DNA of 20,456 nt from Vitrella brassicaformis CCMP3155. Its lineage: Eukaryota; Protista; Chromerida. Positions within the stretch are counted from its first letter, which is position 1; the number at the start of each line of letters is the position of its first letter. The notes beneath the pieces were generated by a model. The model saw only the letters and a program-made list of their open reading frames with translations, searched no databases and was not told the DNA's origin. Both the position numbers and the translations under genes were made by a program. This document shows, in pieces, positions 1 through 17,708 of the stretch. The DNA lies in NCBI GenBank assembly GCA_001179505.1, contig CDMY01000782.1, forward strand, positions 1 to 20,456, given 5' to 3'.

Positions 1-590
1 GTGTAAAGCGCGACCATCCATGCTGTTGGTACCGGGTGTGACTGTGACTCAGCTTGAGAAGCTTCCGTCGTTGCCGTGGTTCGAGTGATCTGCTGACAGC
101 GAGGAGATGATCTGGGGGAAGGCGAAGTCGAATGACTCCACCAGCACGACGAGGCGGTCACACACGTCGAGCGTGACGTGAGCAGCACGCCCTCTACCCA
201 CCTGCTGTTGGCTGTCAGGGCGAACCACCACCCACCGATCGCACACGAGCGACTTGTCGCCGACCCCCCGGCCCATGGCTGTTGCCAGTTGGTGGCGGAT
301 ATCTTCGGCGACGGCGGTCTGCATGTGAGCTGGGAGGATCAGTCCGACCACCGAGAGGCGGGTCAGTGATCACAGCTGCAGGGCGTCGCGGTCCTTGGCT
401 GTGGTGGACTGGTCTCCAGCCATGAAAAAGTCCACTCCTTCCCTCCTGCGGCAGCGCCCATCGCTCCAGGAGCCACTGGTTCCCGCTGAATGCGAAGTCG
501 AACACGGCTCCGGAAGCACGACGAGGTGGTCACAGTCGTCGAGCTTCACGTCTGAAGCAGGCCCTCTACCAACCTGCAGGGGACTGTCGG
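1..590. repeat. Direct repeat, copy 1 (copy 2 at 13020-13609)
   Basis: Same sequence at offset 13019 by eye; the ORF-track translations 49..351, 178..369 and 215..505 are identical to 13068..13370, 13197..13388 and 13234..13524. Confidence 0.95.
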
Positions 591-1360
591 GACCGCTCAG
601 CACCCACCGACCCCATTCCAGCGACTTGTCGTTGACGTCGCGGCCAATGGCTGTCGCAAGCTGACCGCGGGTCTTCTGGGCAGCAGCGGCCTGCAGGCGC
701 GTCGGGATGATGAATAAAACGACTCTACGGCGGGTGAGGTCGTCGCCCAACGCCGCGCGGAGCAGCCGCAGGGCCATGCAGTCGTCGTCTATGGTGCCAC
801 CGGTCGCTGCCATGAAGAAAAGTCGAAAGAAACAGCCGCAATTATCGTCCTGCTTGAGTTCGACCACCGCTGCACCAGCCGCTTGTTGTTGTCCTCGATC
901 AAGCTCTTGTCGACCAGCGCCACGCCGTACCTGTCGAGGGACAGGTAGATCCGCTTGGTGAGGGATCTCCCTTGTCTGAGAAGCGTCACGGGGACAATGG
1001 CCGTATTGACCCACTCATCCTTCGGCTCGACGGCATTGGCGATGATCTCATCGAGCTGTTGGCGGGGAAGCAGCTTGTCAGGGATCGTAAGCATGCCATT
1101 GAAGAGGCGCAGCGTTGATGAATGAAAGGACTGTCTGTCGGGTGAGGCTGTCGCCCAACGTCGCGCGGAGCAGCCGCAGGGCCATGCAGTCGTCGTGTGT
1201 TGTCGACTGGTCGCCCGCCATGAAGAAAAGTCGAAAGCAGCAGCCGCATTTGTCGTCCTGCCTGAGCTTCGACCACCGCTGCATTAGCCGCTTGTTGTTG
1301 TCCTCGATCAAGCTCTCGTCGACGAGTACTACGCCGTACCTGTCAAGGAACAGGTACACA
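49..1360 (-). pseudogene. Disrupted gene of tandem internal repeats, unknown domain family
   Basis: Module YLxLDRYGVxLVDxSLIEDNNKRLxQRWSxLxQDDxCGCxFRLFFMA...DDCMALRLLRAxLGDxLTR occurs twice (~1130-1355, ~720-950) plus a tail at ~370-430. Module QLATAxGRxVxDKSL...QVGRGxAxxVxLDxCDxLVVL occurs twice (~500-665, ~130-295). A 1-nt deletion at ~859 is shown by the paralogous copy; in-frame TGA at 370-372. Confidence 0.75.
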
Positions 1361-1440
1361 CGGCTGCGACAGGGCTTTCGTACGTGTGCTCCAGTAGGAG
1401 GCGGCAAAGTGGTTGCGCGTAGAAGTAAGGAAGGGGCCGG

Positions 1441-1472
1441 TCAGATATAAGATGTAGGTAGCGATGAGCCTG
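1441..1472 (-). other. Conserved acceptor+CATTTTATAT module, copy 1 (diverged)
   Basis: Minus strand TCTCTTCAG|GCTCATCGCTACCTACATCTTATATCTGA. Confidence 0.7.
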
Positions 1473-1539
1473 AAGAGACACCCGAACATCATCGACAGTT
1501 GCGATGCCACACTCATCTACATGTCTACTCACTCTTGTT

Positions 1540-1625
1540 GTACCTTCATCGTCTCTCTTTAGTTTGAAAGGCCGGTCGCTCTGCTTGTCCTCTCTCGACG
1601 TCTCGCTGGGCAACGGGATGCCCAT
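1540..1625 (-). pseudogene. Short coding exon fragment MGIPLPSETSREDKQSDRPFKLKRDDE
   Basis: ATG at 1625; followed by candidate donors (G|GTACAA or GTGAGT) and an intron ending at module copy 1. The RDDEG|gtac motif also occurs at ~6460. Confidence 0.35.
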
Positions 1626-1713
1626 GAATGACTTCGGCTGTCTTCAGCCGTGTTCGAGCACTGCCAAAGGTTGCCGCTGGCTTTGACTGGATCGTTGTCC
1701 TTGGCATATGTCT

Positions 1714-1747
1714 CGCCGAATACAAAATGTAGACAGCCATAGATCTG
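1714..1747 (-). other. Conserved module, copy 2
   Basis: Minus strand TCTCTCAG|ATCTATGGCTGTCTACATTTTGTATTCGG. Confidence 0.75.
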
Positions 1748-1753
1748 AGAGAC

Positions 1754-2360
1754 ATGTCACCTCTCCAAGCTCCTTTGGCAGGGGTGTTGGACATGATTGG
1801 ATGTCGACTCGATGCCGGAATTGGTGGTGAACGCATAATCACCTTTGGGGTCGAGGATCTTGTGCAATGCTCACACACCCATCTTCCTGATGCCGGGCTT
1901 GTCGACCACTTGGACGATCGTCTTCATTTCCTCCCGCTTCTGCCTCTCCTTCAGCTTCGCGGTCACCGTCTCGTAGTAGTCGAGAATGTGGCGCTTGAAC
2001 TGCTCTGCATCCATGAGCTTGTCGCCGACAACGCGCTCGGCGTTGACTCCTCCTGCAGCTCCTCCAGCTTATCTCGGGTGACATAGCTGAGTGGGGCCGG
2101 CTTGGCGGATGGCACTGAGGTGGGGGCCGGTGTGGCGGCCGCGGCAGCAGCAGCAGGGCTGCACGAGGGGAACGAGGTGGACGCCATAAGGATGAAGTAC
2201 ACGGAAGATGCTGCGCGAAAGGCACACAGAAGGGCCATCGGTGTCATGCAGATGCACAGGCCCATCGTCATGCGAGTGTCTCCGTGTCTCGCCTTGTCAG
2301 CAGGGATGTGCCCGACGTATCATGGGGCCGCCGGGTCGTCAGGCAAACGAGGCAAGACCT
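1754..2360 (-). pseudogene. Disrupted multi-exon gene, unknown product with charged helical segment
   Basis: Frame ...YVTRDKLEELQEE shifts at ~2047 to NAERVVGDKLMDAEQFKRHILDYYETVTAKLKERQKREEMKTIVQVVDKPGIRKM, with GC-rich third positions. TGA at 1871-1873 (or a GTGAGC donor there). Upstream exon VLPRLPDDPAAP*YVGHIP has a TGA at 2320-2322. Confidence 0.6.
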
Positions 2361-2663
2361 GAGAGCACAGCACAGAGGCAAGAGGTCTCAAGAGGTCCCA
2401 TGCAGTGCACATGCATCATCCTCTCCACCCCAGTGTGCACACACGCGCTTACCGAGGACAGCTGAAACACTCAGCAGCGCCCCTCTCCCCTACAAAGTCG
2501 CCTCTCACGCCGACTGACGCGCAGTTGACACGGTCTCTCGCCTACGGCGCCAGGTCAGTGAAGCAACCCCGCCGTCACTCCCAGCCGACCGCGAGAAGTG
2601 ACTCTCTCGAACGACCGGCGCGTTGGGGTCGGTTCCGGCGCCATACTTTCAAAAGACGAAGCA

Positions 2664-2688
2664 CAACGGATATAAAATGCAGGCAACG
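2664..2688 (-). other. Conserved module, copy 3 (acceptor replaced by a CA microsatellite)
   Basis: Plus strand CAACG-GATATAAAATGCAGG-CAACG, immediately followed by (GT)n at 2688-2707. Confidence 0.8.
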
Positions 2689-2706
2689 TGTGTGTGTGTG
2701 TGTGTG

Positions 2707-2763
2707 TCTGTTGCCGAGCGTGGCGTGCAGCTCCATCAGGTGGACGTCCTCTTCGTTCGACCA
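2707..2763 (-). pseudogene. Isolated Myb/SANT repeat exon (R3-like N-terminal half)
   Basis: Translates to WSNEEDVHLMELHATLGNR, matching the Myb pattern WTxEEDxxLxxxHxxLGNRW. Preceded by a GT-AG intron 2764-2888; cut off by (AC)n before the next Trp. Confidence 0.7.
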
Positions 2764-2888
2764 CTGACCACACAATACATTGAATACAATACACACCACA
2801 CCCACACAGGCAACCAGTCGGACATCAGAAGACAAAAAGGGAGGGAGGGTGGATGGAGGGATGTGCTTCTTCTCGCTGGCTGCCGCAC

Positions 2889-3748
2889 CTGTTCCTGCAT
2901 GGCAGCTTCCTTCTCCGCCACGGGTAGCTCCTTGAAGGCCTTCATTGCCTCCAGCTGCGTAGAGTAGTCAGCACCACCCACCTCTCCTCGGAACAATCTG
3001 CTTTTGGATCTCGCTTTGCTATTGCTGTCCTTGAAGTGATGCACGAGCTCCTGCCGGCCCTCCAGTGGCCGACGGTCGATCCCGACCCGACAAAGGACAC
3101 GTCGACCCTGCCCTGGCACGTGCCGGCGACCATCGACTTGATGAGCGGCTCTAGGTGGAGATTGGAGTCGGGCTTCTGGCCGTACACATCTGGTATGGTG
3201 CGCCTCAGGGTCCTCTCCGTCGCGGGGAGAGTGCTAAGATAGACTCGCGAGAGAGTGGCCATCGTGCCCATGGTGCGAAGATGCGCTCGAAAGAGACAGA
3301 CACCTCCCTGGATGGATGAGAGCGACTCTGCCTCAGGAATGAGGTCGTCCTGCATCCGATACCGGCCGGTGCGAGCGGCCGACCACACCAGGCCCTCGGC
3401 GAAGAAGGTTTGCTGCACTCCAGCCGTGTAAACGTCGCCCTCGAGCGACACGGGGTCGATCAGCTCCAGGCTCCTCTTTCCCTCAGCATGGCACCCCAGC
3501 AGACAGACCGAGAAACGATACAGCAGCTTCTTGTCGTCCTTGCTCAGGAGGTAGGGGTCTTGTGTGTGGACGGAGACAGACAGCTTGACCTCGTGCTTGG
3601 GATAGGCGTACAGCCTGTAGATTATGTCATCAAATACGCCCACATTGAGTGCGCGGCGTTCATACCATCTGTGTCTCTCTATCTCTTTGCCTACCGTGAC
3701 GCGGCCGGCGTCTTCTCTGCTGCCGTCATCGCCGGAGAGGTCCTTCAT
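2889..3748 (-). CDS. MATH/TRAF-like domain protein, frameshifted near 3062
   Basis: ATG 3748. Segment YRLYAYPK..LSVSV..YRFSVCLL..F..GLVW..GRY..DD..CLFRAHL follows the MATH beta-sandwich pattern by eye. The frame changes near 3062 to GRQELVHHFKDS...KEAAMQEQ, ending at donor GTGCGG (2888). Confidence 0.5.
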
Positions 3749-3872
3749 CTTCAGCCTATGCGCAGCACAGCTGAATGAGACGCACCGAGACAGAGAGGGA
3801 CGTGGTTGGCCTGACATCTCTCCTTACGTGTGGAAGTGCATTGGCCAGTCTGTGACAGTCGATGAAGAAAGA

Positions 3873-3905
3873 GAAGCCCAACGGATATAAAATGTAGCCA
3901 ACGAT
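3873..3905 (-). other. Conserved module, copy 4
   Basis: Plus strand GAAGCC-CAACG-GATATAAAATGTAGC-CAACG-AT; no clear acceptor. Donor GTAAGG near 3827 and acceptor near 3772 could link it as a 5' UTR exon to the MATH-like ORF. Confidence 0.8.
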
Positions 3906-3989
3906 AGGCCCCCCTCTGCCCCTGCTGCGGCTGGCGGGAGGTGGGCGCGGAAAAGGCCCGTGCGGGGCGCAGCAGGGGGGTGGGGCGAT

Positions 3990-5734
3990 GGGATGACTGG
4001 GGCAGGGGGAGGTGAGGGCACGCTGTGCCCTCCCTCCGGCTCTTCTTCATCCTCCCCGCCGGTGAAGAAGATTACGAACACCTGGCCCTTGTACTCGCCG
4101 TCCTGGAAGACGACGGACACCGAGTCGTCAGCCTCGCTATACTTCCACCTGCCGCCCACGACCGTGCACGAGTCGCGAAAGCACTTGCTGACTGGCTCCC
4201 AGTCGTCTAAGGCCCACTCCGCCCACGAGAAATCGGTGCTGCCCTTGTAGACGGAGATGCTCCTCAGCTCTCTGGACAGCTGCTCGCAGTGCGCTTTGCC
4301 GAGGAGGGAGAGGCTCTGCTCAGCCGTCGACACCAGGTCGTAGGCCGCATCATCCATCTCACTCATGCGCTTCTCAAACCCGGCCTCATCCACGCCTCAT
4401 GGAATGCGCGAAAGTCTTTCCAGCCTGAAGGGCAGGACACACACACAGCGAGACGATTCATGCGTGTGACAGTGTGTAGGTGTGAGTTTTATGGCTGCCG
4501 CCGTACCATTGACGAAGCTCTTGACTTGACGGACCAGCTGTGCCGCCCGAGCAGGGCCCTGCCACACCGCCAGTGCCTCGCGGACGCTCACAGGGCTGGT
4601 GGACTCGGGAAAGGCGATGGCCGGGGACAGTGCATACCTGACGATGGATGGGATGGATGGGAGGCAAGGCAGTGGTTGGGTGACGGCTTGTGCGCATTCT
4701 GTGTTGCGTTTTGGTGTCGTGTGGTGGCGTCATTACTGTCTGAGGTCCATTGCGATCATCTTGCCCTCCTGTCGGACACACACAGACACCAGACGACACA
4801 CAAATGGATGGCTAGGCTTGCTGAGCTGGGGTGCTGTGGATCGTCTGCGGCATACCTTGATCCACTTCTTGAACCAGAGGTCAATCTGCTCCAGGGATGC
4901 CTCCAGCACGTCGGTGCCGCAACGAGCGAAGTCCAACTCTGACGACGCGGACATGGGAAGGGCAGCCAAGACACAAATGCACTCACTCAGTGTAGTCGTG
5001 TAGGCGTGTGTGTGTGTGTGTCGTGTTGGGATCCATCTCACCGTTCTTGATGACGTCGACGGAGTCGTGTGTTGGGAAGTTGTTGAGGATCTTGTCGACG
5101 GCGTCGCCAAGTTTGCTGAGCGACTGGAGCTTCTCGCGGTTGGCGGTGATGAAGTTGAAGACGTCTCGGTAGGTCACCAGCAGCAGATACGTCGAGTCAC
5201 CTGGACGCACCGACACACAAAGGAAGACAGAGTCACTGACGTGTTGGTCGATCGGTCACTGTGTGCATTCTTACGTGCGCGGCGGCAGGTGACCGGGGTG
5301 AGCTGTTCTGGAGGCTCGCCGCAGGGCTCGGAAGCCGCCTTCAACTCGGTGAGCTCGCGCATCTGTTTGGCGGTGTCGAGCATCTCCTTCTTGAGGGACT
5401 CTGTCAGAGAGGCAGACAGGAGAAAGGCAGACAGGTGAGTAAGGCGGTCGCCCCAATAGCTGCGCGTGAGTGTATCCCTCACTGATGGACGTGACGCACG
5501 TGTCGACCTCCTTGGCTGCAGGAAGGGACCACAAACGACAGAGGGAGAGAGGGTGGTGGCTGTGCTGTGCAGACCCACGGATGTGGCGTGTGTGTGTGTG
5601 TGCTGTAAGTGCCTTACCGAGCGCCTGCTCAAGAGCAGACAGTTCCTGTTTGCCGGTGAACCTGCACACACACACGCAAACACACACGAACACACACGTC
5701 CATCCACACCCCACCAGCATGATGCATGCGCCAC

Positions 5735-5766
<32 letters not shown>

Positions 5767-6290
5767 TACCTCTTTGCGTCGATGGCAGATGCCTTCCACG
5801 TGTCAGTCTGTCCCTCCTGCTGGTTGAGCACTCGCCCAGCCGCTCGGTCATCTTTCTGATATTGTCCATCCACAAGAAGAAGACGGCGCCTGTGAGCACC
5901 GACTCGCTTCGTGTAAAGCTGTTGGATCCCGAATGTGAACACCTGTGAGGAAACAAACCTGACAACCTGACAACAAATCGGAAGAGTACACTTGTCGGTG
6001 TTTGAAAATGGACTGCTTCTCCCGCTGATTTGGGTTCAGGAGCCCCCCGATCTTCCCCCGCCTCTTGTCGGTGTGGTGAACGGGAAAGACGCCGTTGGGG
6101 GAAATCGTAGGGGCCCTGTAGACACAACCAAGAGACACACAAACACACACGTAATGACATGAGAAGACGGAGCGGTCTCAGCGTCTCTTCTCATGTACGT
6201 CAAGAACAAACTCATGGTCGGCGATCACGTCGTTCTCCGCCAAATGAATGTCGGTCCATTCTGCGGCGTCCGTGATCGTCGATCATGTCT
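3990..6290 (-). pseudogene. Multi-exon (about 11) hypothetical protein gene with frameshift(s)
   Basis: Phase-consistent GT-AG exons including 5042-5200, 4856-4938, 4737-4768, 4507-4637 and 4424 onward give ...DSTYLLLVTYRDVFNFITANREKL...FKKWIKEGKMIAMDLRQYALSPAIAF...VNGWKDFRAFHEAW. A -1 break at ~4390 leads to DEAGFEKRMSEMDD...GQVFVIFFTGGEDEEE. The 5' exons (5770-6290) are less certain. Confidence 0.7.
5741..5766. repeat. (CT)13 intronic microsatellite
   Basis: Directly visible; lies just inside the intron donor at ~5769. Confidence 0.95.
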
Positions 6291-6325
6291 CTGACTTTGG
6301 CGGATACTGGAAGGAAGGAAGAAGG

Positions 6326-6358
6326 ACAGGGATATAAAATGCAGACAGCGATACTCTG
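6326..6358 (-). other. Conserved module, copy 5
   Basis: Minus strand GCTACAG|AGTATCGCTGTCTGCATTTTATATCCCTG. Confidence 0.8.
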
Positions 6359-6449
6359 TAGCTACAGCGAACAGTATGAACGACAATAAGGATGACCCAA
6401 AGTGTCTCAATTTCCTTATTGTTACCGATTCCTGGTCAGTCTTGAACAT

Positions 6450-7080
6450 CCATGTGTACCCTCGTCGTCTCTTCACCATGCCACTGCAGCCGTCATGTCA
6501 GCCATCTCGGCCTCATCGAAGACCGGCACCTCCGTCTCGAGCAACGTCTGTCCCTTCTCCAGCAGATCAATACACGACACCAACAGACTGACCACGATGG
6601 CCTCCGCCGATCGCATTGTTGTGGATATTAGCTTGGGGTTATTAGCGTCAGGCGGCAATTTCTCGTCGACAAGAGCGTCACGAAGGTTAGCCACAGATGG
6701 GCCGCGCCACCTTTTCTTCCGGTTCCTCCTCGCTCGTCGTTCATGGGCGCCACCTTTTCAATCCGCCAGAGCGGTCGAGCCCATGAACGGCAAATTGCCA
6801 GCAGCCTGTCTCGATGCGTCCCGTATGTGTGCATCCATACTGCCTGGTGAGATCCTGACCAGGTCCTTCGGAGCCACAACGGTCGGCCTCTCGAGCGTTA
6901 GAGTGCCGGCCGAAGATGGGCAGTTGGTAGCGTTCAGATGGAGAGAAGTTTCTTTTCTTTGTGTGTCGCCATACGGTGCCAGTCGAAGGGGATGGCGTCT
7001 CGCGGGATGTGGGTGTATTTGCCTGTGGACGTGCCGGCCTCCAGGGCAGCGAGTGCAGCAATGTCGTCGAATCCAACGTA
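6450..7080 (-). pseudogene. Non-canonical downstream exons of the Skp1-like gene, or a separate fragment
   Basis: Phase-0 acceptor at 7081-7082 gives YVGFDDIAALAALEAGTSTGKYTHIPRDAIPFDWH. Further coding-like stretches: NLRDALVDEKLPPDANNPKLISTTMRSAEAIV and LLEKGQTLLETEVPVFDEAEMAD. Exon joins are uncertain. Confidence 0.4.
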
Positions 7081-7154
7081 CTGACATCCACGCAGACGCC
7101 CGTGTCGGCTTGGTATGGCAGTGAGTGTCTTAATGCCCTTATCACAATTCGTAC

Positions 7155-7600
7155 CGCGATGATGCATGCGATGCGAGCGCAGGCCAGCTGAATGAGAGGG
7201 CGGCAGTCGACAAACTCAGCCGCCTGCATCCCACCACACCCACAGCACCAATGGGCACCAGCGGTATGTGTGGGGGGTTGTCATATCGTACCAGAGTCAG
7301 CGAACAGAGACCGTCCACGGTTAGGCGTTCGATGAACTTGGCGTCCCAGTCATCAGCAACAACCTGCACTCACACACGCACGACATCCTGCCGATGCACG
7401 TCGGCCCTCTCCCTCCCTCCCTCCCTCCCTCCCTCACTGACTGACTGACTGACTGTCAACTCTCACCTCCGTCAGTTCATCTGTTTGGATTGGCTTGCTG
7501 ATGTCGGCCGCCTGGCCCTTGTGATGCTCCGCATATTCGCTGATCTGCTTGAGCTGGGCGCTGTCGACCTCTGGCAGCGGGATGGGATCACTGCTCCCGC
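7155..7600 (-). CDS. SKP1: Skp1-like protein, three exons (7467-7600, 7292-7363, 7155-7223), lacking canonical N- and C-termini
   Basis: Spliced translation SDPIPLPEVDSAQLKQISEYAEHHKGQAADISKPIQTDELTE|VVADDWDAKFIERLTVDGLCSLTL|AAEFVDCRPLIQLACARIACIIA aligns with the Skp1 core (IPLPNV...VIEYCxHH...KPL...EWDxxF...LILAANYLDIKPLLDLxCAKVAxxI). Introns are GT-AG and in phase. Confidence 0.85.
7409..7455. repeat. (CCCT)n + (GACT)n intronic microsatellites
   Basis: Directly visible inside the Skp1-like intron 7364-7466. Confidence 0.9.
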
Positions 7601-7699
7601 CTGAAGCAGAAGAAATGACATGCGCTATCATATATCATCGGTCCGTGTGCTCTGATCCCATTGTCTCTCTCTGTCGTACCAGCGGCTGTCTCACCAAAT

Positions 7700-7763
7700 C
7701 AACGAATATAAAATGTGGGCAGCGATAGCCTGATGGAGACACAGTGAGAAGCATGACAGCAAG
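7700..7763 (-). other. Conserved module, copy 6 (extended, 61/64 identical to copy 8)
   Basis: Minus strand CTTGCTGTCATGCTTCTCACTGTGTCTCCATCAG|GCTATCGCTGCCCACATTTTATATTCGTTG; followed by donors GTGAGA and GTACGA upstream of the Skp1 exon acceptor. Confidence 0.85.
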
Positions 7764-8028
7764 AACATTCGACGACGTACCCACTGTACCCTTGTGTACG
7801 TCAGATGGAGGGTCCCTCCTCACAGCAGCCAGCTCGCCTCGCCGCATGCTGCATGCAATGCAGCAGAGACACGGCGAAGGAAAAGGATTCGCCCCATTGA
7901 TGTGTCGATGCGTCTCTTCTGTTGCCATGCATCCCCGTATGTGTGTGTGCCCTTACTCATTCTTGCAGATTGAAGTGTGAGGCGCCTGGAAGTGCTCAGT
8001 GGACAGCCGGCAATGCGAACGAAGATAA

Positions 8029-8059
8029 CAACCAATATAAAATGTAGGCAGCCATCCTA
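8029..8059 (-). other. Conserved module, copy 7
   Basis: Minus strand CCTTAG|GATGGCTGCCTACATTTTATATTGGTTG. Confidence 0.8.
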
Positions 8060-8421
8060 AGGTCGGGCCGATCAGCCGCTCTCGCTCTCCGGCTCCATTC
8101 TGCAGGCAGAGTGACGTCGACCTCCTGATGACACAACCTGTAACACAGCAGACCGACGGACATTATGTGCAGGCTGAATGCAGGCTGAATGAGGCCTCGT
8201 TGTGGTGGTGGTCTGCATGTGATCGATGAAGCCTACTTCGTATCAGTGAGTTGTCGCTGCAGGTTTGAGTCTTGTGGAGGTACCAGACGTCGCTGCACCA
8301 GACGTCCTCTGCAGACGACGCCTGTTCCCACAGCCGACGAGCCTCCTCAGGACACGAGGGCCAGACACAACACATTTCTGCACGAGTGAGGACTGGCTGC
8401 CTTGTCCATCCACTTACTTGA

Positions 8422-9291
8422 CTAGTGTGCACAGGTCTCGCCCAGCTGCTCCTTCAGATGCCGTACAGCCTCCCTGTCGCCGTCCACCCGGTCCTTGCCG
8501 CCGGTCAGCAGCAGGATGTCCATGCCGCCCGAGAGGATGCTACTGACAGTGGTAAAGTGCTGCTTGGTGATGGATGAGGCTCCGTCCTTGTCGACAAACT
8601 GGAAGATGTCCGAGAAGGACCGCTCCAGCCGCATGTTCTCCTGCTCATTCCCCACCGGCAGGCCTCGCACGCAGCGGAGCATGACACACTCCATCTCGTC
8701 GGCACTGGCGAGTCGGTCTCCCTCGCGGCCGACGTTGAGCAGACGGAGCGACGCTGCCGAAGAATACACCCTGCAAGACAGATATGCAGGAATGAGATCG
8801 TGTGTGTCAATCCATCCGCCTCCTCGTACCGTCATCGTAGAGCAGCTCCTCGCGATTCTTGCCAAACAGCTTCAGGAGCATCGTCAGCCTGCCATGGCAC
8901 CCTCGAAGAAGGCGCGGCCCAGCTGCTCCTTCAGATGCCGTACAGCCTTCATGTCGTCCTCCAGCTGGTCCTCGCCGCCGGTCAGCAGCACGATGTGCAT
9001 GCCGCCCTTGCCCTTGAGGATGCCGTCCATGGTGTCGAACAGCTGCCGGCTGATGCAGAATGCCCCGTCCTTGTCGACAAACTGGAAGATGTCGTGGATA
9101 GGACGGCCGCGCTTCCGCTGCAGCATGTCGACGAAGTCGCCACCGGGATCCAGACGCTGCCCGTGTCTGTCCTTGAGGCCTCGCACCAGATTCGACTGCA
9201 ACCATCGTGCTTTCTTCGGGCCGACCAGCCGGTCGCCTGCTCCTGCGGTGTTCTCGATGCACACAGACGTGGCCTTCTTGATGACACACCC
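8422..9291 (-). pseudogene. Two-repeat hypothetical protein (DIFQFVDKDG...LLTGGxD...AVRHLKEQLG), frameshifted
   Basis: Two paralogous exons starting GCVIKKATSVC and GCILRQRRSVC, both ending in AVRHLKEQLG. -1 breaks at ~8888 and ~8739; the latter is supported by alignment to the other repeat. Intron ~8773-8829. Confidence 0.75.
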
Positions 9292-9379
9292 TGCAACACA
9301 TCAGACAGACGGGCATCACTTGACGCGGTTGAATGGCGGCATTCTGGTCCGTATTTCTGCCTCGACGTGCATCCTATCT

Positions 9380-9900
9380 AAAATCGTACCATCTCGATGG
9401 AAGCGACGGTCCGTCATCTCTCAGCTGCATGAGGAACAGGAAGACGAACTTCGTGAGGGATCTCCCTAGTCTGAGCAGCGTAACGGCCGAGCTGCTCCAG
9501 GTGGACAATGGCCGTATTGACCCACTCATCCTTCGGCTCCTCATCTTCAGCGGAAAGTGCGACAGGTCACCAGCGGGGGTGAGAGGGGGGGAAATCACAG
9601 GCTATTACCTGTCCGTCATCATGGTGAGGGACGGCAAGGAGGTAAGAGTATTTCACCAGTTCTCCATGGCATCGAGAAGGTTGGGGGGGTCGATGCTGCT
9701 CTCTTCACAGGCACACACAGTGCAATGCACAAATGAGCTCTCTGCATGACTGTCCTTTCTCACCTGGTTGCGGTCATCTCATGCTGCTCCCGTTGCTGCC
9801 GTCGTGTAAGACTCCTGCGAAGGTCGTGGATGGTCGCTCCAGACCGGGCTCCTCCTTGACCTTTGGCGTCCAACCAGCTGCGAGACTTGCAGCAGATTCC
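9380..9900 (-). pseudogene. Upstream exon fragments related to the 49-1360 gene
   Basis: 9503-9539 is identical over 37 nt to 992-1028 (EPKDEWVNTAIV), followed by VTLLRLGRSLTK. Further coding-like fragments lie at ~9615-9710 and ~9765-9900. Confidence 0.5.
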
Positions 9901-10015
9901 TGCACAAACACATCGTGCACACCGATACAGACATGCATATTCTCTCACCCCTACTTCCTTGCTGCTTACTCGAGAAATAGTGAGTACTTGTGTGCGCAGC
10001 TAGCGAACAAGAAAC

Positions 10016-10079
10016 CAACGAATATAAAATGTGGGCAGCGATGACCTGTTGGAGACACAGTGAGAAGCATGACAGCAAG
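10016..10079 (-). other. Conserved module, copy 8
   Basis: Minus strand CTTGCTGTCATGCTTCTCACTGTGTCTCCAACAG|GTCATCGCTGCCCACATTTTATATTCGTTGG. Confidence 0.85.
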
Positions 10080-10299
10080 CCTGCCCATGCGAACGTCAAT
10101 CATGACACCATGCGCACGTCAATCACGACAACACGCACGTCGGTGTTCTATGGCTGACCTCCTCGTCAGATAGTTCCTGCCGCCACGGAGCAGACAGAGA
10201 CAGCAGCCATGAGTGAAGGGCGCTGCCAGAGCCGGAGCCCTCCTGAGATGAGGAAGGCGCCTCCGCAGCCGCTGCACAACATGTGCGGTGAGGCCGGGC

Positions 10300-11833
10300 A
10301 GTTTACGTCTTGCACACGGGGACGTCTACGAGGGTCTGCAGGTCTTTCACGGCGGCTTCCATCAGGTCAGCGGTCACACTGCTGGGCACTGGCAGCGAAA
10401 ACTCCTGCACTCAACACATAGACACACGCATAAGATTCACGCAGTTGTGTGTGTTGGCGATGGCGTGTTTGTCGCCTTACGCTCTGGTGCGTGTGGCCGG
10501 CTGTGTCTGTGTGCTGGACGATGACCGTCCATGCGCACCCACCGTAGTGACAGCAGGTCATCCTGCACACAAGACAAATCAAAACAACGCGCATTGCAGT
10601 GGTTCTGTGGCCCTGTGTGACGGACTCACCACTGATGCCCAGATCGATGCCCTCCATCTCCCGCCCCAGCCTGCCGTCCCCTTGCCGGACCCGCCACTGC
10701 AGCCAACCCGCACACAAGGAGCTGAGCGCTCTCTGCACATGGATGGATCCGGTGTTGTGCTTATACTTACCTGGATTCGGTGCCGCGTCTGTGTGAAGAG
10801 GCTCTCCAGCACACACTTGTGGAACTGCTGAATGGTCAATGGTCATCGGCTCACGGCGCATGGCCTGGCCGCACTGCCCGGGCTCCTCCGGGGGACCCTC
10901 CCTCAACCTCACTCGCACCTGACGCAAAGGGAAGGGCAAGCAACATCTGTCTGTCTGTCATGTGCGTGATTGCCTGCCTGGCTGTCTGCCTGCCTGCCTG
11001 CCTGCCTGTGTGGGGATGTGATGTAGCCTTACCCTCCTGCTGCGCCCTCTCCCTTTCCTCCTTCTCCTTTTGCTCCTTTCGCTCCCTCAGCGTCCGCCTG
11101 ATGGCCTTCAGGTCACCGCCCCATATCTGCAACGTGTACATCAACCACACCATGCACACGTCGCTTTGCTCTCGCACAACACGCTGACGTCGTCAGTCTT
11201 TCATCGCTGACCTTCTCAGCAGCAGACAGCTCCAGGCCATGGCCCTCTCCCTCCGCTTGAAGGCGATAGAGGGGTTGCGCGACGACATGAGCGGGTCATC
11301 GACAGTCACCGCGTCCGGAGAGAGGTCGACCGTCTGGTCCTCCTCTGACTGTGGGCCATCTGCCGAGTGCGGACGACCTTGGGGTCAACATCCGCATCCT
11401 ATACATATACGCACAAGAGAGAGAGCAAACGGGTGTGTGGTGTGGTGTCGTGCGGTGTGGTGTGTGTCGTGCCTACCGTGAAGTCGTCCTGAACAGACAC
11501 ACAGGAAAGCAGGCAAGCACAGCCGTGGGCGGTCAGTGAGCTGGGCTGCATGTGTTGTCTGCTGTGAAGTGTACCTCGCTGTCCCTGCCCACCTTCCAGT
11601 CATCTGGGAAAACAGCAGCAGTATACACCTTCCGCAGGCCGGCGGGCTCTACATGAACATTCTCGCTTCGGGCGGGCCGATAGCCTTGATGATGGCTTCA
11701 TTGAGCTCATCGCGGGTGAGGAGCTTGTCGGGCTTTGTGAGTAGCGCGTTGAACAGCCTCAGCGTGGTTGGATCCTTGAATTCGCTCGAGGGTGCTGCTG
11801 TACGAGGGCTACGTGGTCGAGGGTGCTTGATCT
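10300..11833 (-). pseudogene. Multi-exon hypothetical protein gene with several frame breaks
   Basis: Exons give EFKDPTTLRLFNALLTKPDKLLTRDELNEAIIKAIGPP (homologous to TLRLFNGMLTIPDKLLPRQQLDEII at ~1050-1115), a 12-nt exon DDFT, IWGGDLKAIRRTLRERKEQKEKEERERAQQE, QQFHKCVLESLFTQTRHRIQ and EFSLPVPSSVTADLMEAAVKDLQTLVD. Breaks at ~11664 and ~11367, plus a 7-bp duplication (GACCATT x2 on minus) near 10835. Confidence 0.65.
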
Positions 11834-11924
11834 GGAACCACGTTCGCTGCCGTCTCTGTCACAGCTGCTCTATTGAAGATCCTTGTCCGACTTACTAGTG
11901 TGTGGTACGTATCGATCGCAGAAA

Positions 11925-11963
11925 GAAGCCCCTCGAATATAAAATGTAGGCAACGATGACCTG
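11925..11963 (-). other. Conserved module, copy 9
   Basis: Minus strand CCTTCAACAG|GTCATCGTTGCCTACATTTTATATTCGAGGGGCTTC; a GTAAGT donor follows near 11895. Confidence 0.85.
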
Positions 11964-12112
11964 TTGAAGGAGACGTTGGAGACGCCTTTCGGTGTTTCGC
12001 TGAGGCTGAAAGATCCACCCTCCTACCCATTTGCCAACACATAGCCATGGAGCAGACAGAGACAGACGTCAATATTCGCCACCCAGCAATTTGCACACTC
12101 CCATCCCGCCCT

Positions 12113-12439
12113 GCGTACTCTCTTTGGTGATGGCTGAGCCACATTCTTGTGCTGCTTGCGTGGCAGGTGGGGACGGAAGAGGTGACGGTGCTTTCGGACT
12201 GATGGCGCGAAGGGGATGGGGTCGGACCGGGCCTCTACATGAAGATACGAAAACCACCCCGGGAAAGAGACATACATACAGTATACTCGTGTGCTGGATG
12301 GCTCATGCACTTGTGATCCTACCAGTTGGTGAAGTGCACTTCATAAGTGCACCGTCATGACCGGAGTAGTATAGAAAAAGGCTTGTGATGTCGCCTTTGG
12401 CCTCTCCCATGGCTTTTGTGACCTCCTCCACCGAATCAA
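12113..12439 (-). pseudogene. Fragment with a caspase/metacaspase-like His motif, plus a following exon
   Basis: DSVEEVTKAMGEAKGDITSLFLYYSGHDG resembles the metacaspase GDxLFFxYSGHG strand. No Cys motif was found and stops follow. The 3' part is paralogous to 13910-14012. Confidence 0.35.
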
Positions 12440-12509
12440 CTTCGCAAGGAATTTCGTCAGGCAGAGAGACCGCAAAAGGGAAATCCGGAGACGCACCCAA
12501 GCGAGGGAA

Positions 12510-12548
12510 GAAGCCCAACGAATATAAAATGTAGGCAGCAATGACCTG
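12510..12548 (-). other. Conserved module, copy 10
   Basis: Minus strand GTCTCCTACAG|GTCATTGCTGCCTACATTTTATATTCGTTGGGCTTC. Confidence 0.85.
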
Positions 12549-12604
12549 TAGGAGACATTGGATGGTGTCTCGTATCTCTTTTCTTCACCACCCTGTCGAG
12601 ACCT

Positions 12605-13019: not shown

Positions 13020-13609
13020 GTGTAAAGCGCGACCATCCATGCTGTTGGTACCGGGTGTGACTGTGACTCAGCTTGAGAAGCTTCCGTCGTTGCCGTGGTT
13101 CGAGTGATCTGCTGACAGCGAGGAGATGATCTGGGGGAAGGCGAAGTCGAATGACTCCACCAGCACGACGAGGCGGTCACACACGTCGAGCGTGACGTGA
13201 GCAGCACGCCCTCTACCCACCTGCTGTTGGCTGTCAGGGCGAACCACCACCCACCGATCGCACACGAGCGACTTGTCGCCGACCCCCCGGCCCATGGCTG
13301 TTGCCAGTTGGTGGCGGATATCTTCGGCGACGGCGGTCTGCATGTGAGCTGGGAGGATCAGTCCGACCACCGAGAGGCGGGTCAGTGATCACAGCTGCAG
13401 GGCGTCGCGGTCCTTGGCTGTGGTGGACTGGTCTCCAGCCATGAAAAAGTCCACTCCTTCCCTCCTGCGGCAGCGCCCATCGCTCCAGGAGCCACTGGTT
13501 CCCGCTGAATGCGAAGTCGAACACGGCTCCGGAAGCACGACGAGGTGGTCACAGTCGTCGAGCTTCACGTCTGAAGCAGGCCCTCTACCAACCTGCAGGG
13601 GACTGTCGG
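13020..13609. repeat. Direct repeat, copy 2 (of 1-590)
   Basis: Matches 1-590 up to the start of the N gap. Confidence 0.95.
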
Positions 13610-13909
13610 NNNNNNNNNNNNNNNNNNNNNNNNNNNNNNNNNNNNNNNNNNNNNNNNNNNNNNNNNNNNNNNNNNNNNNNNNNNNNNNNNNNNNNNNNNN
13701 NNNNNNNNNNNNNNNNNNNNNNNNNNNNNNNNNNNNNNNNNNNNNNNNNNNNNNNNNNNNNNNNNNNNNNNNNNNNNNNNNNNNNNNNNNNNNNNNNNNN
13801 NNNNNNNNNNNNNNNNNNNNNNNNNNNNNNNNNNNNNNNNNNNNNNNNNNNNNNNNNNNNNNNNNNNNNNNNNNNNNNNNNNNNNNNNNNNNNNNNNNNN
13901 NNNNNNNNN
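13610..13909. other. Assembly gap (300 N)
   Basis: Run of N. Confidence 1.
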
Positions 13910-14345
13910 ATGAAGATACGAAAACCACCCCGGGAAAGAGACATACATACAGTATACTCGTGTGCTTTATGGCTCATGCACTTGTGATCCTACTAATTGG
14001 TGAAGTGCACCCATAAGTGCACTGAACAGACAAGGGGAGAGACGCACAAACTGCACAGATGGCCAGTTTAAGCAGCTGTGCAGTGCACTTACGATATGAA
14101 CAGTCTTCGCGTGGAAGCTTCCAGCGGCGTCGAAGCCCGCCTGCTGAATGTTCCTCTCCTCCAGCAACTCCCCAATGTACCCCTGCATGATCCATCCATC
14201 GCCGCAGGCCACGGAGCAGACAGAGACAGCAGCCATGTGTCCACACATATGACTTGCACACTCCCCTCCCCGCCCTCCCTACCCTCCTTGGCGGCGCCAG
14301 CCACTCGTTGTAGAGGTAGAGGCGGGGTCGGTCACAGGCTGGCCG
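13910..14345 (-). pseudogene. Three-exon fragment paralogous to 12040-12345
   Basis: Exons RPACDRPRLYLYNEWLAPPRR | GYIGELLEERNIQQAGFDAAGSFHAKTVHI have GT-AG boundaries. 13910-14012 matches 12239-12341 with few mismatches, and the intron tract GCCAYGGAGCAGACAGAGACAG is shared with ~12045 and ~10183. Confidence 0.55.
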
Positions 14346-14717: not shown

Positions 14718-15504
14718 CTACACAATCCTTCGCTGCTGCCGATCAATTGCTGCCGATGAGCCGACTCGCACGCCGTCGTCGGCGTGGGTCTTTGTGGTCC
14801 GAAGCGGCCCAGAGGGGACAGGCTCGATGCCGCCGCTTGTCGTCGTCCGAAACCACGTCACCCCTCCCTCTGCGTCCCGCACCATGTCCAACTGCTCGAT
14901 CCGGTTCGCTCGCTGTTCAGTGGCGGGGCTGTGGTACACCGGCACGTCGGTCGTCAACAGCGTGTGCATCTTGGCGCATGCGTCATGGGTGCAGACCGGC
15001 AGAGCGATATCGATCATCTGCTGCCTGCTGAATAGCTGTCGCAAATTCTGCCCACCCGCTCCACTCGTCGCTCGCCGCAGGGCGCTGTCCAGCATCTGAT
15101 TGACCGTCGGCAGCTGGTGGAGGTTCGGGGGGGCATCTCTAGCGGCGCCGAGGAAGCGATTACGCAGATAGAACCACGCGCCGAGAAGTCTTTCGGGGTC
15201 CTTGACGATGCGGGCGTACACGAGTATGTAGCGGTTGTAGTGGTTGAAGTAGCTATAGTGAATGAAGGGAGGGAGGGGCTCGCCGCCTGCCGACTGGAGC
15301 CCCCCGAGATGGCTTGGTAGCTGCATTGAGAGCTCCTGGTCACCGAATACCTGCAAGTCCTCTCCCTCCACCCCGCTCCTGGCTCGGTGTAGAGCAGTCT
15401 GCAGCATCTGCTTGATGTCCGGCAGCTCGTTGAGGAGCGGGCACCTCCTTTCAGGGCTTCGTGGGCATCGATGGTGTCTGTTGGCAGACGTCCCACGTTC
15501 CGCA
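14718..15504 (-). CDS. Hypothetical protein, large terminal exon with an internal repeat
   Basis: Uninterrupted frame of about 260 codons; LNELPDIKQMLQTALHRARSG is repeated as LHQLPTVNQMLDSALRRATSG. Acceptor at 15505-15506 is in phase with an upstream exon ending at 15551; start codon not identified. Confidence 0.7.
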
Positions 15505-16130
15505 CTTAAAGATACACAACATACATCGACGCACACGTCGGGCTACTCACCTGTGGTGGGCCGTCGCCGGAAGAAGAGAAAGGAGCACTGCCAAGGCAAC
15601 CTGGGATACGGGCTGATGGAGAAGAGGCCGCAGAGGTCGCGGGCAAGTCGTGGCTGACGGGTATGTGCGACCAGCAGAAACGGCGGCGTATGAACGGCTT
15701 GGGAAAAAAGAAGCTGGCCGTCTCCCTGACTTTTGACCACCGTGACACTCACCCGCCGGACGTTCCACTGGTTCTTCTTTTTCTGCACCCTTCTGGGAAA
15801 AGAAACATACACAAGAGCACTGTTCTTGACACTTTTAACACCTCCTTTCAGGGCTTCGCGGGCATCGATGGTGTCTGTTGGCAGACGTCGCACTTTTCGC
15901 ACACCTGGAGACATCCACGCAGTTGAAAATACACAACATACAGGCCTGCCACACGCGTCACATCTCGCCTTGCACCTTGCCAGTGGTTTCCACCTGGTGG
16001 GCCGTCGCAAAAGGAAGAGAAGGGAGCACTGCCAGGCCACCAGGGAAAACGGGCTGGTCCCACAACGGGTGTCGCGCGATGCGCTGCTCAGAAGGGGAGG
16101 GCCGCAGAGGTCGCAGCGAAGTCATGTCAG
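15443..16130. repeat. Diverged tandem duplication, period about 400 bp
   Basis: ACCTCCTTTCAGGGCTTCGYGGGCATCGATGGTGTCTGTTGGCAGACGTC at ~15443 and ~15840; TGGTGGGCCGTCGC..GGAGCACTGCCA..GGCCGCAGAGGTCGC in both copies. Confidence 0.85.
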
Positions 16131-16665: not shown

Positions 16666-17691
16666 TCATCCCTTCACCGTCCCTCTCTTAATGACGTCGT
16701 TCTCGAGGTTGAAATGCTGCAGCACGGCACGCCACCGGGGCATCGACTGCGGGTAGCGGTGAGCGAGCGGCTGAGATAGATCGCCAACATGCCGCTCCCC
16801 CGTCCACAGAAGGATGACGCCCCCACTCATCCACTCTAGACAAGCGGCAAAGTCCTCATTGGGCCGGAAACCGCTCACAATCACATCACGGAACTGGAGT
16901 TCGGTGAGTGTCCGGTAGTCCACAGCGATGCCCTGCTGCTCGCTGATGCGCTCAGTCTTGAGACGGTGATGGCGGGGGTCATTGCCGTTGATGAGAGCCT
17001 GCAGCACAATCCTGACGCCCACCTCCCTCTCACGCGGCCACCGCGAGTGCAGTCCGTCCAGGAGGAATGACGAGAAGGAGCGGTAGAGCCAGTTGGCCCG
17101 GCGGATGGCGGGATCGGTCGTCTTGTAGCCCTCAGTGTAGCGATAGTGCGCCGACAGCTCAATCAGCGGCACCACACGGAACGACTCATTGCCGATCCGA
17201 TAGACACCGTTGTCGGCTTGCTGCAGCGCCAGGCTGGTGCTCTGTACCTGGTAGGTGAGCATGTGGCCGAACAGCCGATAGATCGCCATCGCCAATGGCA
17301 GCTGATGGAAGGAGGTCTTTCTGGGGAGGTTGGCCATCAGCCACTGCACCGGCAGCACCAGCGGCAGTCCAGTGGCCGGCGGCAGCCGATAGATGGCGGC
17401 GAGGCGGATGAAGACCACACCGACCCGACGCCACTCGTCGCCACTGCCCTGCTCCAGCACATAGGCCACACGCAGCACATAGGTCAATGAGAGGGGGGCG
17501 GTGCGGTCGATGTCGATGAGGCCGGTGAGTGAGTGGCGGGCGAGGGAGCCGTCGATGCGCTCCACCAGCACACCAGCCGTCACCAACACCGCTTTTGCCC
17601 GGCAGGTGGCTCGCACACAGACGAGCTCATGGGCGAGGAGGGAGGGGAGAATGCGCCTGCGCCACACCTCATCGGGCACCGAATCAGACAT
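16666..17691 (-). CDS. F-box-like N-terminal motif protein (341 aa from ATG 17691), lineage-specific C-terminal domain
   Basis: Intact single frame. The N-terminus VPDEVWRRRILPSLLAHELVCVRATCR fits the F-box pattern LPxEhhxxIhxxLxxxDLxxhxxVCR; the rest is not recognised. Confidence 0.75.
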   Translation of the reverse strand: MSDSVPDEVWRRRILPSLLAHELVCVRATCRAKAVLVTAGVLVERIDGSLARHSLTGLIDIDRTAPLSLTYVLRVAYVLEQGSGDEWRRVGVVFIRLAAIYRLPPATGLPLVLPVQWLMANLPRKTSFHQLPLAMAIYRLFGHMLTYQVQSTSLALQQADNGVYRIGNESFRVVPLIELSAHYRYTEGYKTTDPAIRRANWLYRSFSSFLLDGLHSRWPREREVGVRIVLQALINGNDPRHHRLKTERISEQQGIAVDYRTLTELQFRDVIVSGFRPNEDFAACLEWMSGGVILLWTGERHVGDLSQPLAHRYPQSMPRWRAVLQHFNLENDVIKRGTVKG

Positions 17692-17708
17692 TGCCACCAA
17701 CCACTCAA

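What the first reader, a model, noticed from the sequence alone, without database searches (positions are those of the whole stretch)
1441..12548. Ten same-orientation copies of a splice-acceptor + CATTTTATAT module between unrelated gene fragments
Seen: a consensus of minus-strand YAG|GTCATCGCTGCCTACATTTTATATTCGTTGGGCTTC at 1441, 1714, 2664, 3873, 6326, 7700, 8029, 10016, 11925 and 12510. Eight of ten have a pyrimidine tract and YAG 3-6 nt before the core (5 nt in five copies). The core is bracketed by CAACG/CAGCG direct repeats, perfect at 2664 and 3880. Copies usually fall where one gene fragment ends and an unrelated one begins, and no single reading frame is conserved through them. I found none in 12.6-20.4 kb. 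Inference: the module could be (a) a trans-splice or 3'-processing signal resolving same-strand polycistronic RNA, as with nematode operon Ur elements or trypanosome polypyrimidine tracts; (b) a shared leader exon or Inr-type core promoter (CTACATT fits YYANWYY); or (c) the terminus or recombination site of a gene-capturing element.
Basis: partly seen in the sequence, partly recalled or inferred. Interest (0 to 1): 0.85.

Follow-up and report, generated by a model that had tools for sequence, protein, structure and literature searches.

The report
Short repeat between algal gene fragments
A small scaffold of the alga Vitrella brassicaformis carries ten same-direction copies of a short conserved sequence lying between or inside DNA-level copies of pieces of unrelated genes; it looks like a seam of a gene-fragment patchwork, and the RNA data I could reach show no splicing signal in use.

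Summary
Ten copies of CATTTTATAT (at most one mismatch), all on the minus strand, lie in 1.4-12.6 kb; chance expects 0.07. The window is the whole scaffold CDMY01000782.1 of Vitrella brassicaformis CCMP3155, and all seven called genes are also on the minus strand.

The repeat has a conserved core of about 24 nt. Homology reaches at most about 70 nt, and the flanks are unrelated. The pyrimidine tract and YAG are part of the repeat itself.

Independent DNA contigs cross five of the copies, so these junctions are not assembly chimeras. The pieces between copies keep their introns and include domains cut short (Myb, SKP1), so they are DNA-level partial duplicates, not retrocopies.

The one RNA run laid has no coverage over about 7750-10180, which holds two copies. 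It shows no joint at a module AG. Two motif-bearing RNA contigs from other loci hold the motif internally, one with its upstream AG unspliced. Trans-splicing is therefore not supported, and a promoter or leader role is untested.

My best reading (about 0.4) is a low-copy dispersed repeat marking seams of a recombination or insertion patchwork. A genome-wide scan and 5'-end mapping could not be run. The scan had already noted this same stretch as a 14-kb mosaic (s1-239570).

The parts
12508..12562 (-). Module copy 1. Closest to the consensus, with an upstream pyrimidine tract, CAG and a local hairpin.
11923..11980 (-). Module copy 2, 86% identical to copy 1 over 58 nt.
10009..10079 (-). Module copy 3. 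Shares a sharp 68-nt unit (94% identity) with the 7706 copy. A 23-nt tandem repeat lies just upstream.
8022..8061 (-). Module copy 4, inside the annotated 637-nt intron of the SKP1-like gene model P0003.
7696..7763 (-). Module copy 5, in the same annotated intron, about 100 nt upstream of the SKP1 exon 7600-7476.
6319..6358 (-). Module copy 6, inside the 759-aa gene model. By my frame check it lies in an intron (6475-6307), 23 nt upstream of the next AG.
3868..3905 (-). Module copy 7, inside the 759-aa gene model. It has no upstream YAG.
2652..2688 (-). Module copy 8. It is 5'-truncated and joined through a CA microsatellite to a Myb repeat that is cut at profile position 22 of 46.
1707..1745 (-). 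Module copy 9 (diverged; the core has one change).
1431..1477 (-). Module copy 10 (diverged). After about 75 nt of unrelated sequence comes a 5'-truncated unit of a tandemly repeated family.
7476..7624 (-). SKP1-POZ exon copy with 24 nt of its upstream intron. DNA runs hold two variants (depth about 54 and 36). RNA uses the other variant, joined at 7600 to a 152-nt 5' part whose first 30 nt are absent from the scaffold.
13610..13909 (.). Assembly gap (N run). It is preceded by 13020-13609, an exact copy of 1-590.
10182..10211 (-). 30-nt element upstream of the 10022 module. It recurs at 14208-14237 (100%) and 12044-12076 (79%), which suggests that the spacers carry more shared material than the module.

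Best explanation
The motif is a low-copy, short dispersed repeat with a conserved core of about 24 nt, ATCGCTGCCTACATTTTATATTCG, and homology of at most about 70 nt.

On this scaffold it lies in the spacers of a DNA-level patchwork of partial copies of unrelated genes (SKP1-like, EF-hand, Myb-like and others), all in the gene-sense orientation.

I infer that the array grew by repeated local events that reused this sequence. Candidates are ectopic recombination or replication template switching between copies, or repeated insertion beside a copy that duplicates it, with short-tract gene conversion keeping the copies alike.

The pyrimidine tract and YAG are part of the repeat. No data here show them used as a splice acceptor.

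Shown: the copies, their orientation, the unrelated flanks, the real junctions, and that the fragments keep introns and are truncated.

Inferred: how the array grew.
For: - Ten same-strand copies against 0.07 expected.
- The 7706 and 10022 copies share a sharply bounded 68-nt unit at 94% identity with unrelated flanks on both sides. This points to copying or conversion of the short unit alone.
- Independent DNA contigs from three runs cross five modules with both flanks: 7594-8469, 9510-10375, 11838-12295 and 12266-12600.
- The fragments keep introns. RNA contigs skip 68-88 nt CT..AC stretches.
- The fragments include cut domains: Myb profile positions 2-22 of 46 end at the 2670 module, and SKP1_POZ covers positions 26-61 of 62.
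- The SKP1 exon exists as two DNA variants about 5% apart. I infer from where the contigs start and end that their homology ends about 24 nt into the intron.
- Contigs from other loci match the motif and then diverge on both sides. By my estimate from excess depth there are only some 5-10 further close copies.
- No hairpin, RNA family, tRNA or transposon protein fits.
Against: - No transposon terminus, target-site duplication or enzyme was found, so the copying mechanism is unidentified.
- The seams that could be placed lie 40-240 nt from the module, not at it: 7624 against a module end at 7696, and 1356 against 1431.
- The core is much better conserved than its flanks, and it occurs inside expressed RNA contigs at other loci (depth 204.6 for one). 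This would also fit a functional cis-element under selection.
- Only one RNA run, kept as contigs, was laid, and only on 7000-12600.
- The genome-wide distribution could not be scanned.
Confidence: 0.4

Rival explanations
1. The motif is a core-promoter or 5'-leader element. An AT-rich box in a GC-rich genome, oriented with the genes, would be copied together with, or selected upstream of, each fragment.
For: - Strict co-orientation with all seven called genes.
- Conservation is centred on TTTTATAT with conserved flanks.
- Three copies lie 605-649 nt upstream of annotated start codons.
- One motif-bearing RNA contig ends only 38 nt upstream of the motif.
- The motif shares the 9-nt TTATATTCG with the Toxoplasma ribosomal-protein promoter element TRP-1, TCGGCTTATATTCGG (PMC11358496). 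This is a lead only.
Against: - No RNA coverage at about 7750-10180, which includes the stretches downstream of the 8035 and 10022 copies.
- RNA contigs at other loci contain the motif and sequence on both sides.
- The SKP1 exon is spliced in RNA to a different 5' exon.
- Called genes in 14.7-19.4 kb have no copy.
- Only a few further copies appear in DNA depth.
Confidence: 0.2
2. The motif is an intron-resident mobile element (introner-like or a very short non-autonomous element). It would carry branch-point and pyrimidine-tract or acceptor-like signals and insert in gene-sense orientation.
For: - The 8035 and 7706 copies lie in an annotated 637-nt intron. By my reading, 6332 and 3885 lie in introns of 169 and about 233 nt. 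Introns confirmed by RNA are 68-88 nt.
- The AG-free run after the motif is longer than background (median 22.5 against 9 nt, P = 0.02), and the 30 nt downstream are pyrimidine-rich (0.64 against 0.49).
- Other first-stage notes report introner candidates in this genome. These are unchecked.
Against: - No terminal inverted repeats or target-site duplications.
- No RNA joint coincides with a module.
- Motif-bearing RNA contigs keep it, so at those loci it is exonic or retained.
- Part of the pyrimidine signal is module homology itself.
- The nearness of donor sites is not significant.
Confidence: 0.15
3. The motif is a trans-splice acceptor, or a relic of a spliced leader as in dinoflagellates and Perkinsus.
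For: - A pyrimidine tract and YAG precede 8 of 10 copies.
- It loosely resembles CC.TA..CATTTT of the dinoflagellate leader. I recalled that leader sequence from memory, and the alignment needs three gaps.
Against: - No RNA contig shows a leader joined at a module AG.
- One motif-bearing RNA contig includes the upstream AG region.
- The 3' end of the homology is ragged, not a fixed junction.
- The bodies keep introns, unlike recycled cDNAs.
- The genome paper does not use the terms trans-splicing or spliced leader.
Confidence: 0.05
4. The motif is an RNA-level target or trigger site of about 24 nt, for example for a small RNA or an RNA-binding protein. Alternatively it is a plus-strand TATA box (TATAAAAT) that drives antisense RNA into the preceding gene fragment. 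Either way the array would produce regulatory RNA against parent genes.
For: - The core has small-RNA size and a strict orientation.
- On the plus strand TATAAAAT is intact in 8 of 10 copies, and a conserved GGAGACA lies 28-34 nt downstream in six copies.
- By inspection, several modules follow the stop codon and likely 3'UTR of the preceding fragment.
Against: No RNA of either strand was seen at about 7750-10180 in the run laid. There are no small-RNA data, and the reading is speculative.
Confidence: 0.07
5. The motif is a coding exon for a hydrophobic signal-peptide or membrane segment, shuffled onto many genes.
For: All frames are open through the core. One frame reads a hydrophobic ..IAAYILYSLGFF.. 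and, at the 12522 copy, runs on in frame into the next exon.
Against: - Substitutions fall about equally on the three codon positions (11, 6 and 8 in the best frame), with a ratio near neutral (my count).
- The 7706 copy is out of phase with the SKP1 exon.
- Pyrimidine-rich DNA reads as hydrophobic in any frame.
Confidence: 0.03

Closest known systems
Gene-fragment capture by Helitrons and Pack-type DNA transposons
   Same: A DNA-level mosaic of pieces of unrelated genes. The pieces keep their introns, are mostly in one orientation, and are largely silent or chimeric.
   Different: No Rep/helicase or transposase gene is present. There is no 5'-TC or hairpin-CTRR end and no terminal inverted repeats. 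Here a short internal repeat recurs between the pieces, which is not typical of those elements.
Relict spliced leaders upstream of recycled genes in dinoflagellates and Perkinsus
   Same: A short conserved sequence preceded by AG, in the gene orientation, upstream of many gene copies in an alveolate relative.
   Different: The bodies here contain introns. The motif boundary is ragged, the sequence is different, and no leader-bearing RNA was seen.
Introner elements (intron-generating transposons of algae and dinoflagellates)
   Same: A short element with splice-like signals, co-oriented with genes. Several copies lie inside annotated or predicted introns.
   Different: No inverted repeats or target duplications. 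Removal as an intron is not shown. Copy number is low and the copies are strongly clustered.
Templated-insertion chains and replication template switching (FoSTeS/MMBIR-type complex rearrangements)
   Same: Strings of short templated pieces from several loci, with a recurring segment whose entry and exit points vary.
   Different: The copies here differ in age (62-100% identity to the reference copy). The motif also occurs at other loci, and no junction microhomology analysis was possible.
Toxoplasma TRP-1 ribosomal-protein promoter element (TCGGCTTATATTCGG)
   Same: It shares the 9-nt TTATATTCG, is oriented, and comes from a related lineage.
   Different: No ribosomal-protein gene is here. 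No transcription start data exist. The resemblance was noticed after the fact.

Membership tests
Spliced-leader trans-splicing site or relict leader | RNA joined at the AG to a common leader that is not encoded upstream | tested here: not met
   No joint at any module AG is listed. One motif-bearing RNA contig carries the upstream AG region. Limits: one run, kept as contigs, laid on 7000-12600 only.
Spliced-leader trans-splicing site or relict leader | A fixed 3' end of the leader sequence at the junction with unrelated bodies | tested here: not met
   Homology decays over 3-20 nt after ATAT, differently in each copy.
Spliced-leader trans-splicing site or relict leader | Bodies are processed (intronless) cDNA copies | tested here: not met
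   RNA contigs skip 68-88 nt CT..AC introns that are present in the window DNA.
Helitron-type capture | A Rep/helicase gene, or the typical termini (5' TC; 3' hairpin and CTRR) | tested here: not met
   Pfam found nothing on the ORFs tested. There is no consistent hairpin, and no CTRR end by inspection.
Helitron-type capture | Captured genomic gene fragments with introns, in one orientation | tested here: met
Introner element | The element coincides with an intron removed from RNA | tested here: inconclusive
   Two copies lie in an annotated intron and two in predicted ones. No RNA joint covers them.
Introner element | Terminal inverted repeats and target-site duplication | tested here: not met
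   and inspection of the 7706 and 10022 flanks.
Core promoter element | Transcripts start at a fixed short distance downstream | not testable with these tools
   No 5'-end data. Contigs have no ends that can be trusted. The RNA run has no coverage downstream of the 8035 and 10022 copies.
Integron attC-like recombination site | An imperfect palindrome that folds as a single strand | tested here: not met
   z-scores run from -1.5 to +0.9, with no shared structure.
Known RNA families or tRNA-derived elements | A match to an Rfam model or a tRNA | tested here: not met

The most novel reading that the evidence does not exclude
The module is a reusable site at which Vitrella strings pieces of its own genes into a one-directional array. 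It would be a eukaryotic repeat-and-insert locus, built by a site-directed recombination or priming activity. Its transcripts, sense or antisense from the TATAAAAT side, might feed RNA-based regulation of the parent genes.
Probability: 0.08. Interest if true: 0.85.

Novelty: new variant of a known kind. Interest (0 to 1): 0.4.

Why it matters
If the module really directs how gene pieces are joined, it would give a concrete sequence handle on exon and gene-fragment shuffling in a free-living relative of apicomplexan parasites. Other notes of this scan also report shuffled exon cassettes in this genome.

If it is only a passively copied repeat in a poorly assembled, mostly silent scaffold, it is an annotation caveat. 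The 186-aa and 759-aa gene models that span it are then probably chimeras.

The negative result also matters. Nothing here supports spliced-leader trans-splicing in chromerids.

Tried and rejected
- Integron attC idea (the GTTGGGC resembles a core site): rejected. The window is eukaryotic and no hairpin forms.
- Rfam at a permissive threshold and tRNA search: nothing relevant.
- Pfam on 29 ORF pieces: only weak SKP1_POZ, Myb and TCTP hits, and no transposon protein.
- Protein atlas on the 293-aa ORF: no lead.
- Three homologue searches returned nothing or only the window's own proteins.
- The representative search with the SKP1 exon returned the window's own 186-aa protein, which is a one-member cluster, so the expressed variant's locus could not be fetched.
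- Two metagenome scans for the motif: 0 hits, then 3 chance hits in AT-rich contigs.
- Literature: no paper holds the motif, and none describes a spliced leader or introners in Vitrella.
- Brute-force rebuilding of the gene models gave too many solutions.
- 'Cassette exon' idea (strong donor sites on both sides): not significant, P = 0.09 and 0.42.
- Coding-exon idea: no codon-position signal (and my count).
- V(D)J-like heptamer with a 23-nt spacer in two copies: judged a coincidence.
Full report
**Source of the window.**
- Gene look-ups place the window as the entire 20,456-bp scaffold CDMY01000782.1 of Vitrella brassicaformis CCMP3155 (GCA_001179505.1).
- The GC content is about 58%.
- All seven called genes are on the minus strand, at these positions:
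  - from beyond 19417 to 16666
  - 15326-14718
  - 11288-10303
  - 9417-8422 (P0002, named EF-hand by a source)
  - 8375-6934 (P0003 = CEM33469.1, named SKP1 POZ)
  - 6616-2942
  - 813-370 (P0001)
- Positions 1-590 are repeated exactly at 13020-13609, followed by an N gap at 13610-13909. The scaffold is therefore either part of a tandem structure or imperfectly assembled.

- CATTTTATAT with at most one mismatch occurs ten times, always on the minus strand, between 1445 and 12531. Shuffles give 0.07 on average.
- A 21-nt version finds eight copies with at most three mismatches, against none in shuffles.
- The alignment gives a consensus in three parts:
  - upstream, tgtctcc, a few bases, then cag;
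  - three bases, then ATCGCTGCCTACATTTTATATTCG;
  - downstream, ttgggcttctt.
- The invariant columns lie in the 24-nt middle.
- Eight copies have the YAG. The 3885 and 2670 copies do not.
- Self-comparison shows that homology never exceeds about 70 nt and that the flanks are otherwise unrelated.
- The 7706 and 10022 copies share a sharply bounded 68-nt unit at 94% identity.

**The junctions are real.**
- Contigs of three DNA-like runs cross the modules with both flanks: 7594-8469, 9510-10375, 11838-12295 and 12266-12600.
- Other DNA contigs match only the motif and diverge on both sides.
- By my estimate from the excess depth, only some five to ten further close copies exist in the genome. This is a rough figure, because only near-identical stretches are laid.

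**What lies between the copies.**
- One run (X14) behaves as RNA. Its contigs skip 68-88 nt stretches ending CT..AC on the plus strand, which are minus-strand GT-AG introns. The window DNA keeps these introns, so the pieces are DNA-level copies, not retrocopies.
- Pfam gives a Myb repeat covering only profile positions 2-22 of 46. It ends at a CA microsatellite joined to a 5'-shortened module (2670).
- Pfam also gives a SKP1 POZ piece covering positions 26-61 of 62.
- The SKP1 exon 7476-7600 exists as two DNA variants, at depth about 54 and 36. From where the contigs start and end, I infer that the two share sequence only to about 7624, that is, 24 nt into the upstream intron.
- The RNA uses the other variant. 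It is joined exactly at 7600 to a 152-nt 5' part, the first 30 nt of which are not in the scaffold.
- A tandem family at 1-1440 is 5'-truncated about 75 nt after the 1445 module.
- Seams are therefore near the modules but not at them.

**Tests of the splice and leader readings.**
- The RNA run has no coverage from about 7750 to 10180, which holds the 8035 and 10022 copies, and it lists no joint at any module AG.
- Two RNA contigs from other loci hold the motif internally.
  - One includes the sequence upstream of the AG and ends 38 nt upstream.
  - For the other, a joined form has depth 204.6 against single-copy DNA depth.
- The motif's 3' boundary is ragged.
- The genome paper does not use the terms trans-splicing or spliced leader, and I found no paper on it for Vitrella.
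- The cassette-exon look is not significant. The distance to the next strong donor has P = 0.09, and to the previous one P = 0.42.
- The AG-free run after the motif is longer than background (P = 0.02), and the downstream 30 nt are pyrimidine-rich. Part of this signal is the module's own sequence.
- All three frames are open, but substitutions show no codon-position bias by my count.
- No shared fold was found, no Rfam or tRNA match, and no transposon protein.

**Reading.**
- The anatomy fits a short dispersed repeat lying in the spacers of a DNA-level patchwork of partial gene copies.
- The 68-nt unit shared by two copies with unrelated flanks shows that the short unit itself is copied or converted.
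- The variable extent of the copies would fit repeated recombination, template switching or insertion at this sequence. I cannot show the mechanism, and I found no enzyme or terminal structure.
- The stronger conservation of the core, and its presence in expressed RNA elsewhere, keep a functional cis-element (promoter, leader or RNA site) alive as a rival.
- The core shares TTATATTCG with the Toxoplasma TRP-1 promoter element (PMC11358496). This is a lead, not a test.

**Limits.**
- It covered 7000-12600 and used assembled contigs.
- The metagenome scans gave nothing real.
- No genome-wide scan was possible.
- The same stretch had been noted in this scan as a 14-kb unidirectional mosaic.

Noticed in passing
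window 1-590 and 13020-13609; gap 13610-13909: The first 590 bases of the scaffold are repeated exactly 13,019 bases further on, just before an N gap. The array may be a tandem repeat of about 13 kb or a collapsed assembly.
   Followed up: partly
window 7476-7624: The SKP1-like exon has two DNA variants about 5% apart. RNA uses the variant that is not in the scaffold, spliced to a 152-nt 5' part whose first 30 nt are also not in the scaffold. In the one RNA run laid, the public 186-aa model (first exon at 8375) has no coverage of that exon.
   Followed up: partly
window 10085-10141: A 23-nt tandem repeat (2.6 copies) lies directly upstream of the 10022 module.
   Followed up: no
window 10182-10211, 14208-14237, 12044-12076: A 30-nt element recurs, twice upstream of a module and once beyond the gap. 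Blocks around 12040-12352 and 13910-14290 are paralogous but in a different order.
   Followed up: partly
window 370-1440, 9417-9566, 11652-11858: Pieces of one unnamed family recur, with peptide motifs such as PDKLL, EPKDEW and FFMAGDQSTT. By eye, one unit has a 1-nt frameshift, and one copy seems to have a 55-nt intron where another has none.
   Followed up: no
window 16666-19417 and 15442-16056: A 675-aa gene whose 418-aa ORF begins with what looks by eye like an F-box. Upstream of it are 397-441-nt tandem repeats. This part has no module copy.
   Followed up: no
runs X9-X13: Marine sediment metagenomes from 2023-2025 hold up to 37% of the sampled words of this stretch, so this alga or a very close relative occurs in such sediments.
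   Followed up: no
window 11431-11467: A CA-rich simple repeat gives a depth of thousands in both DNA and RNA runs. It is not a feature of interest.
   Followed up: yes
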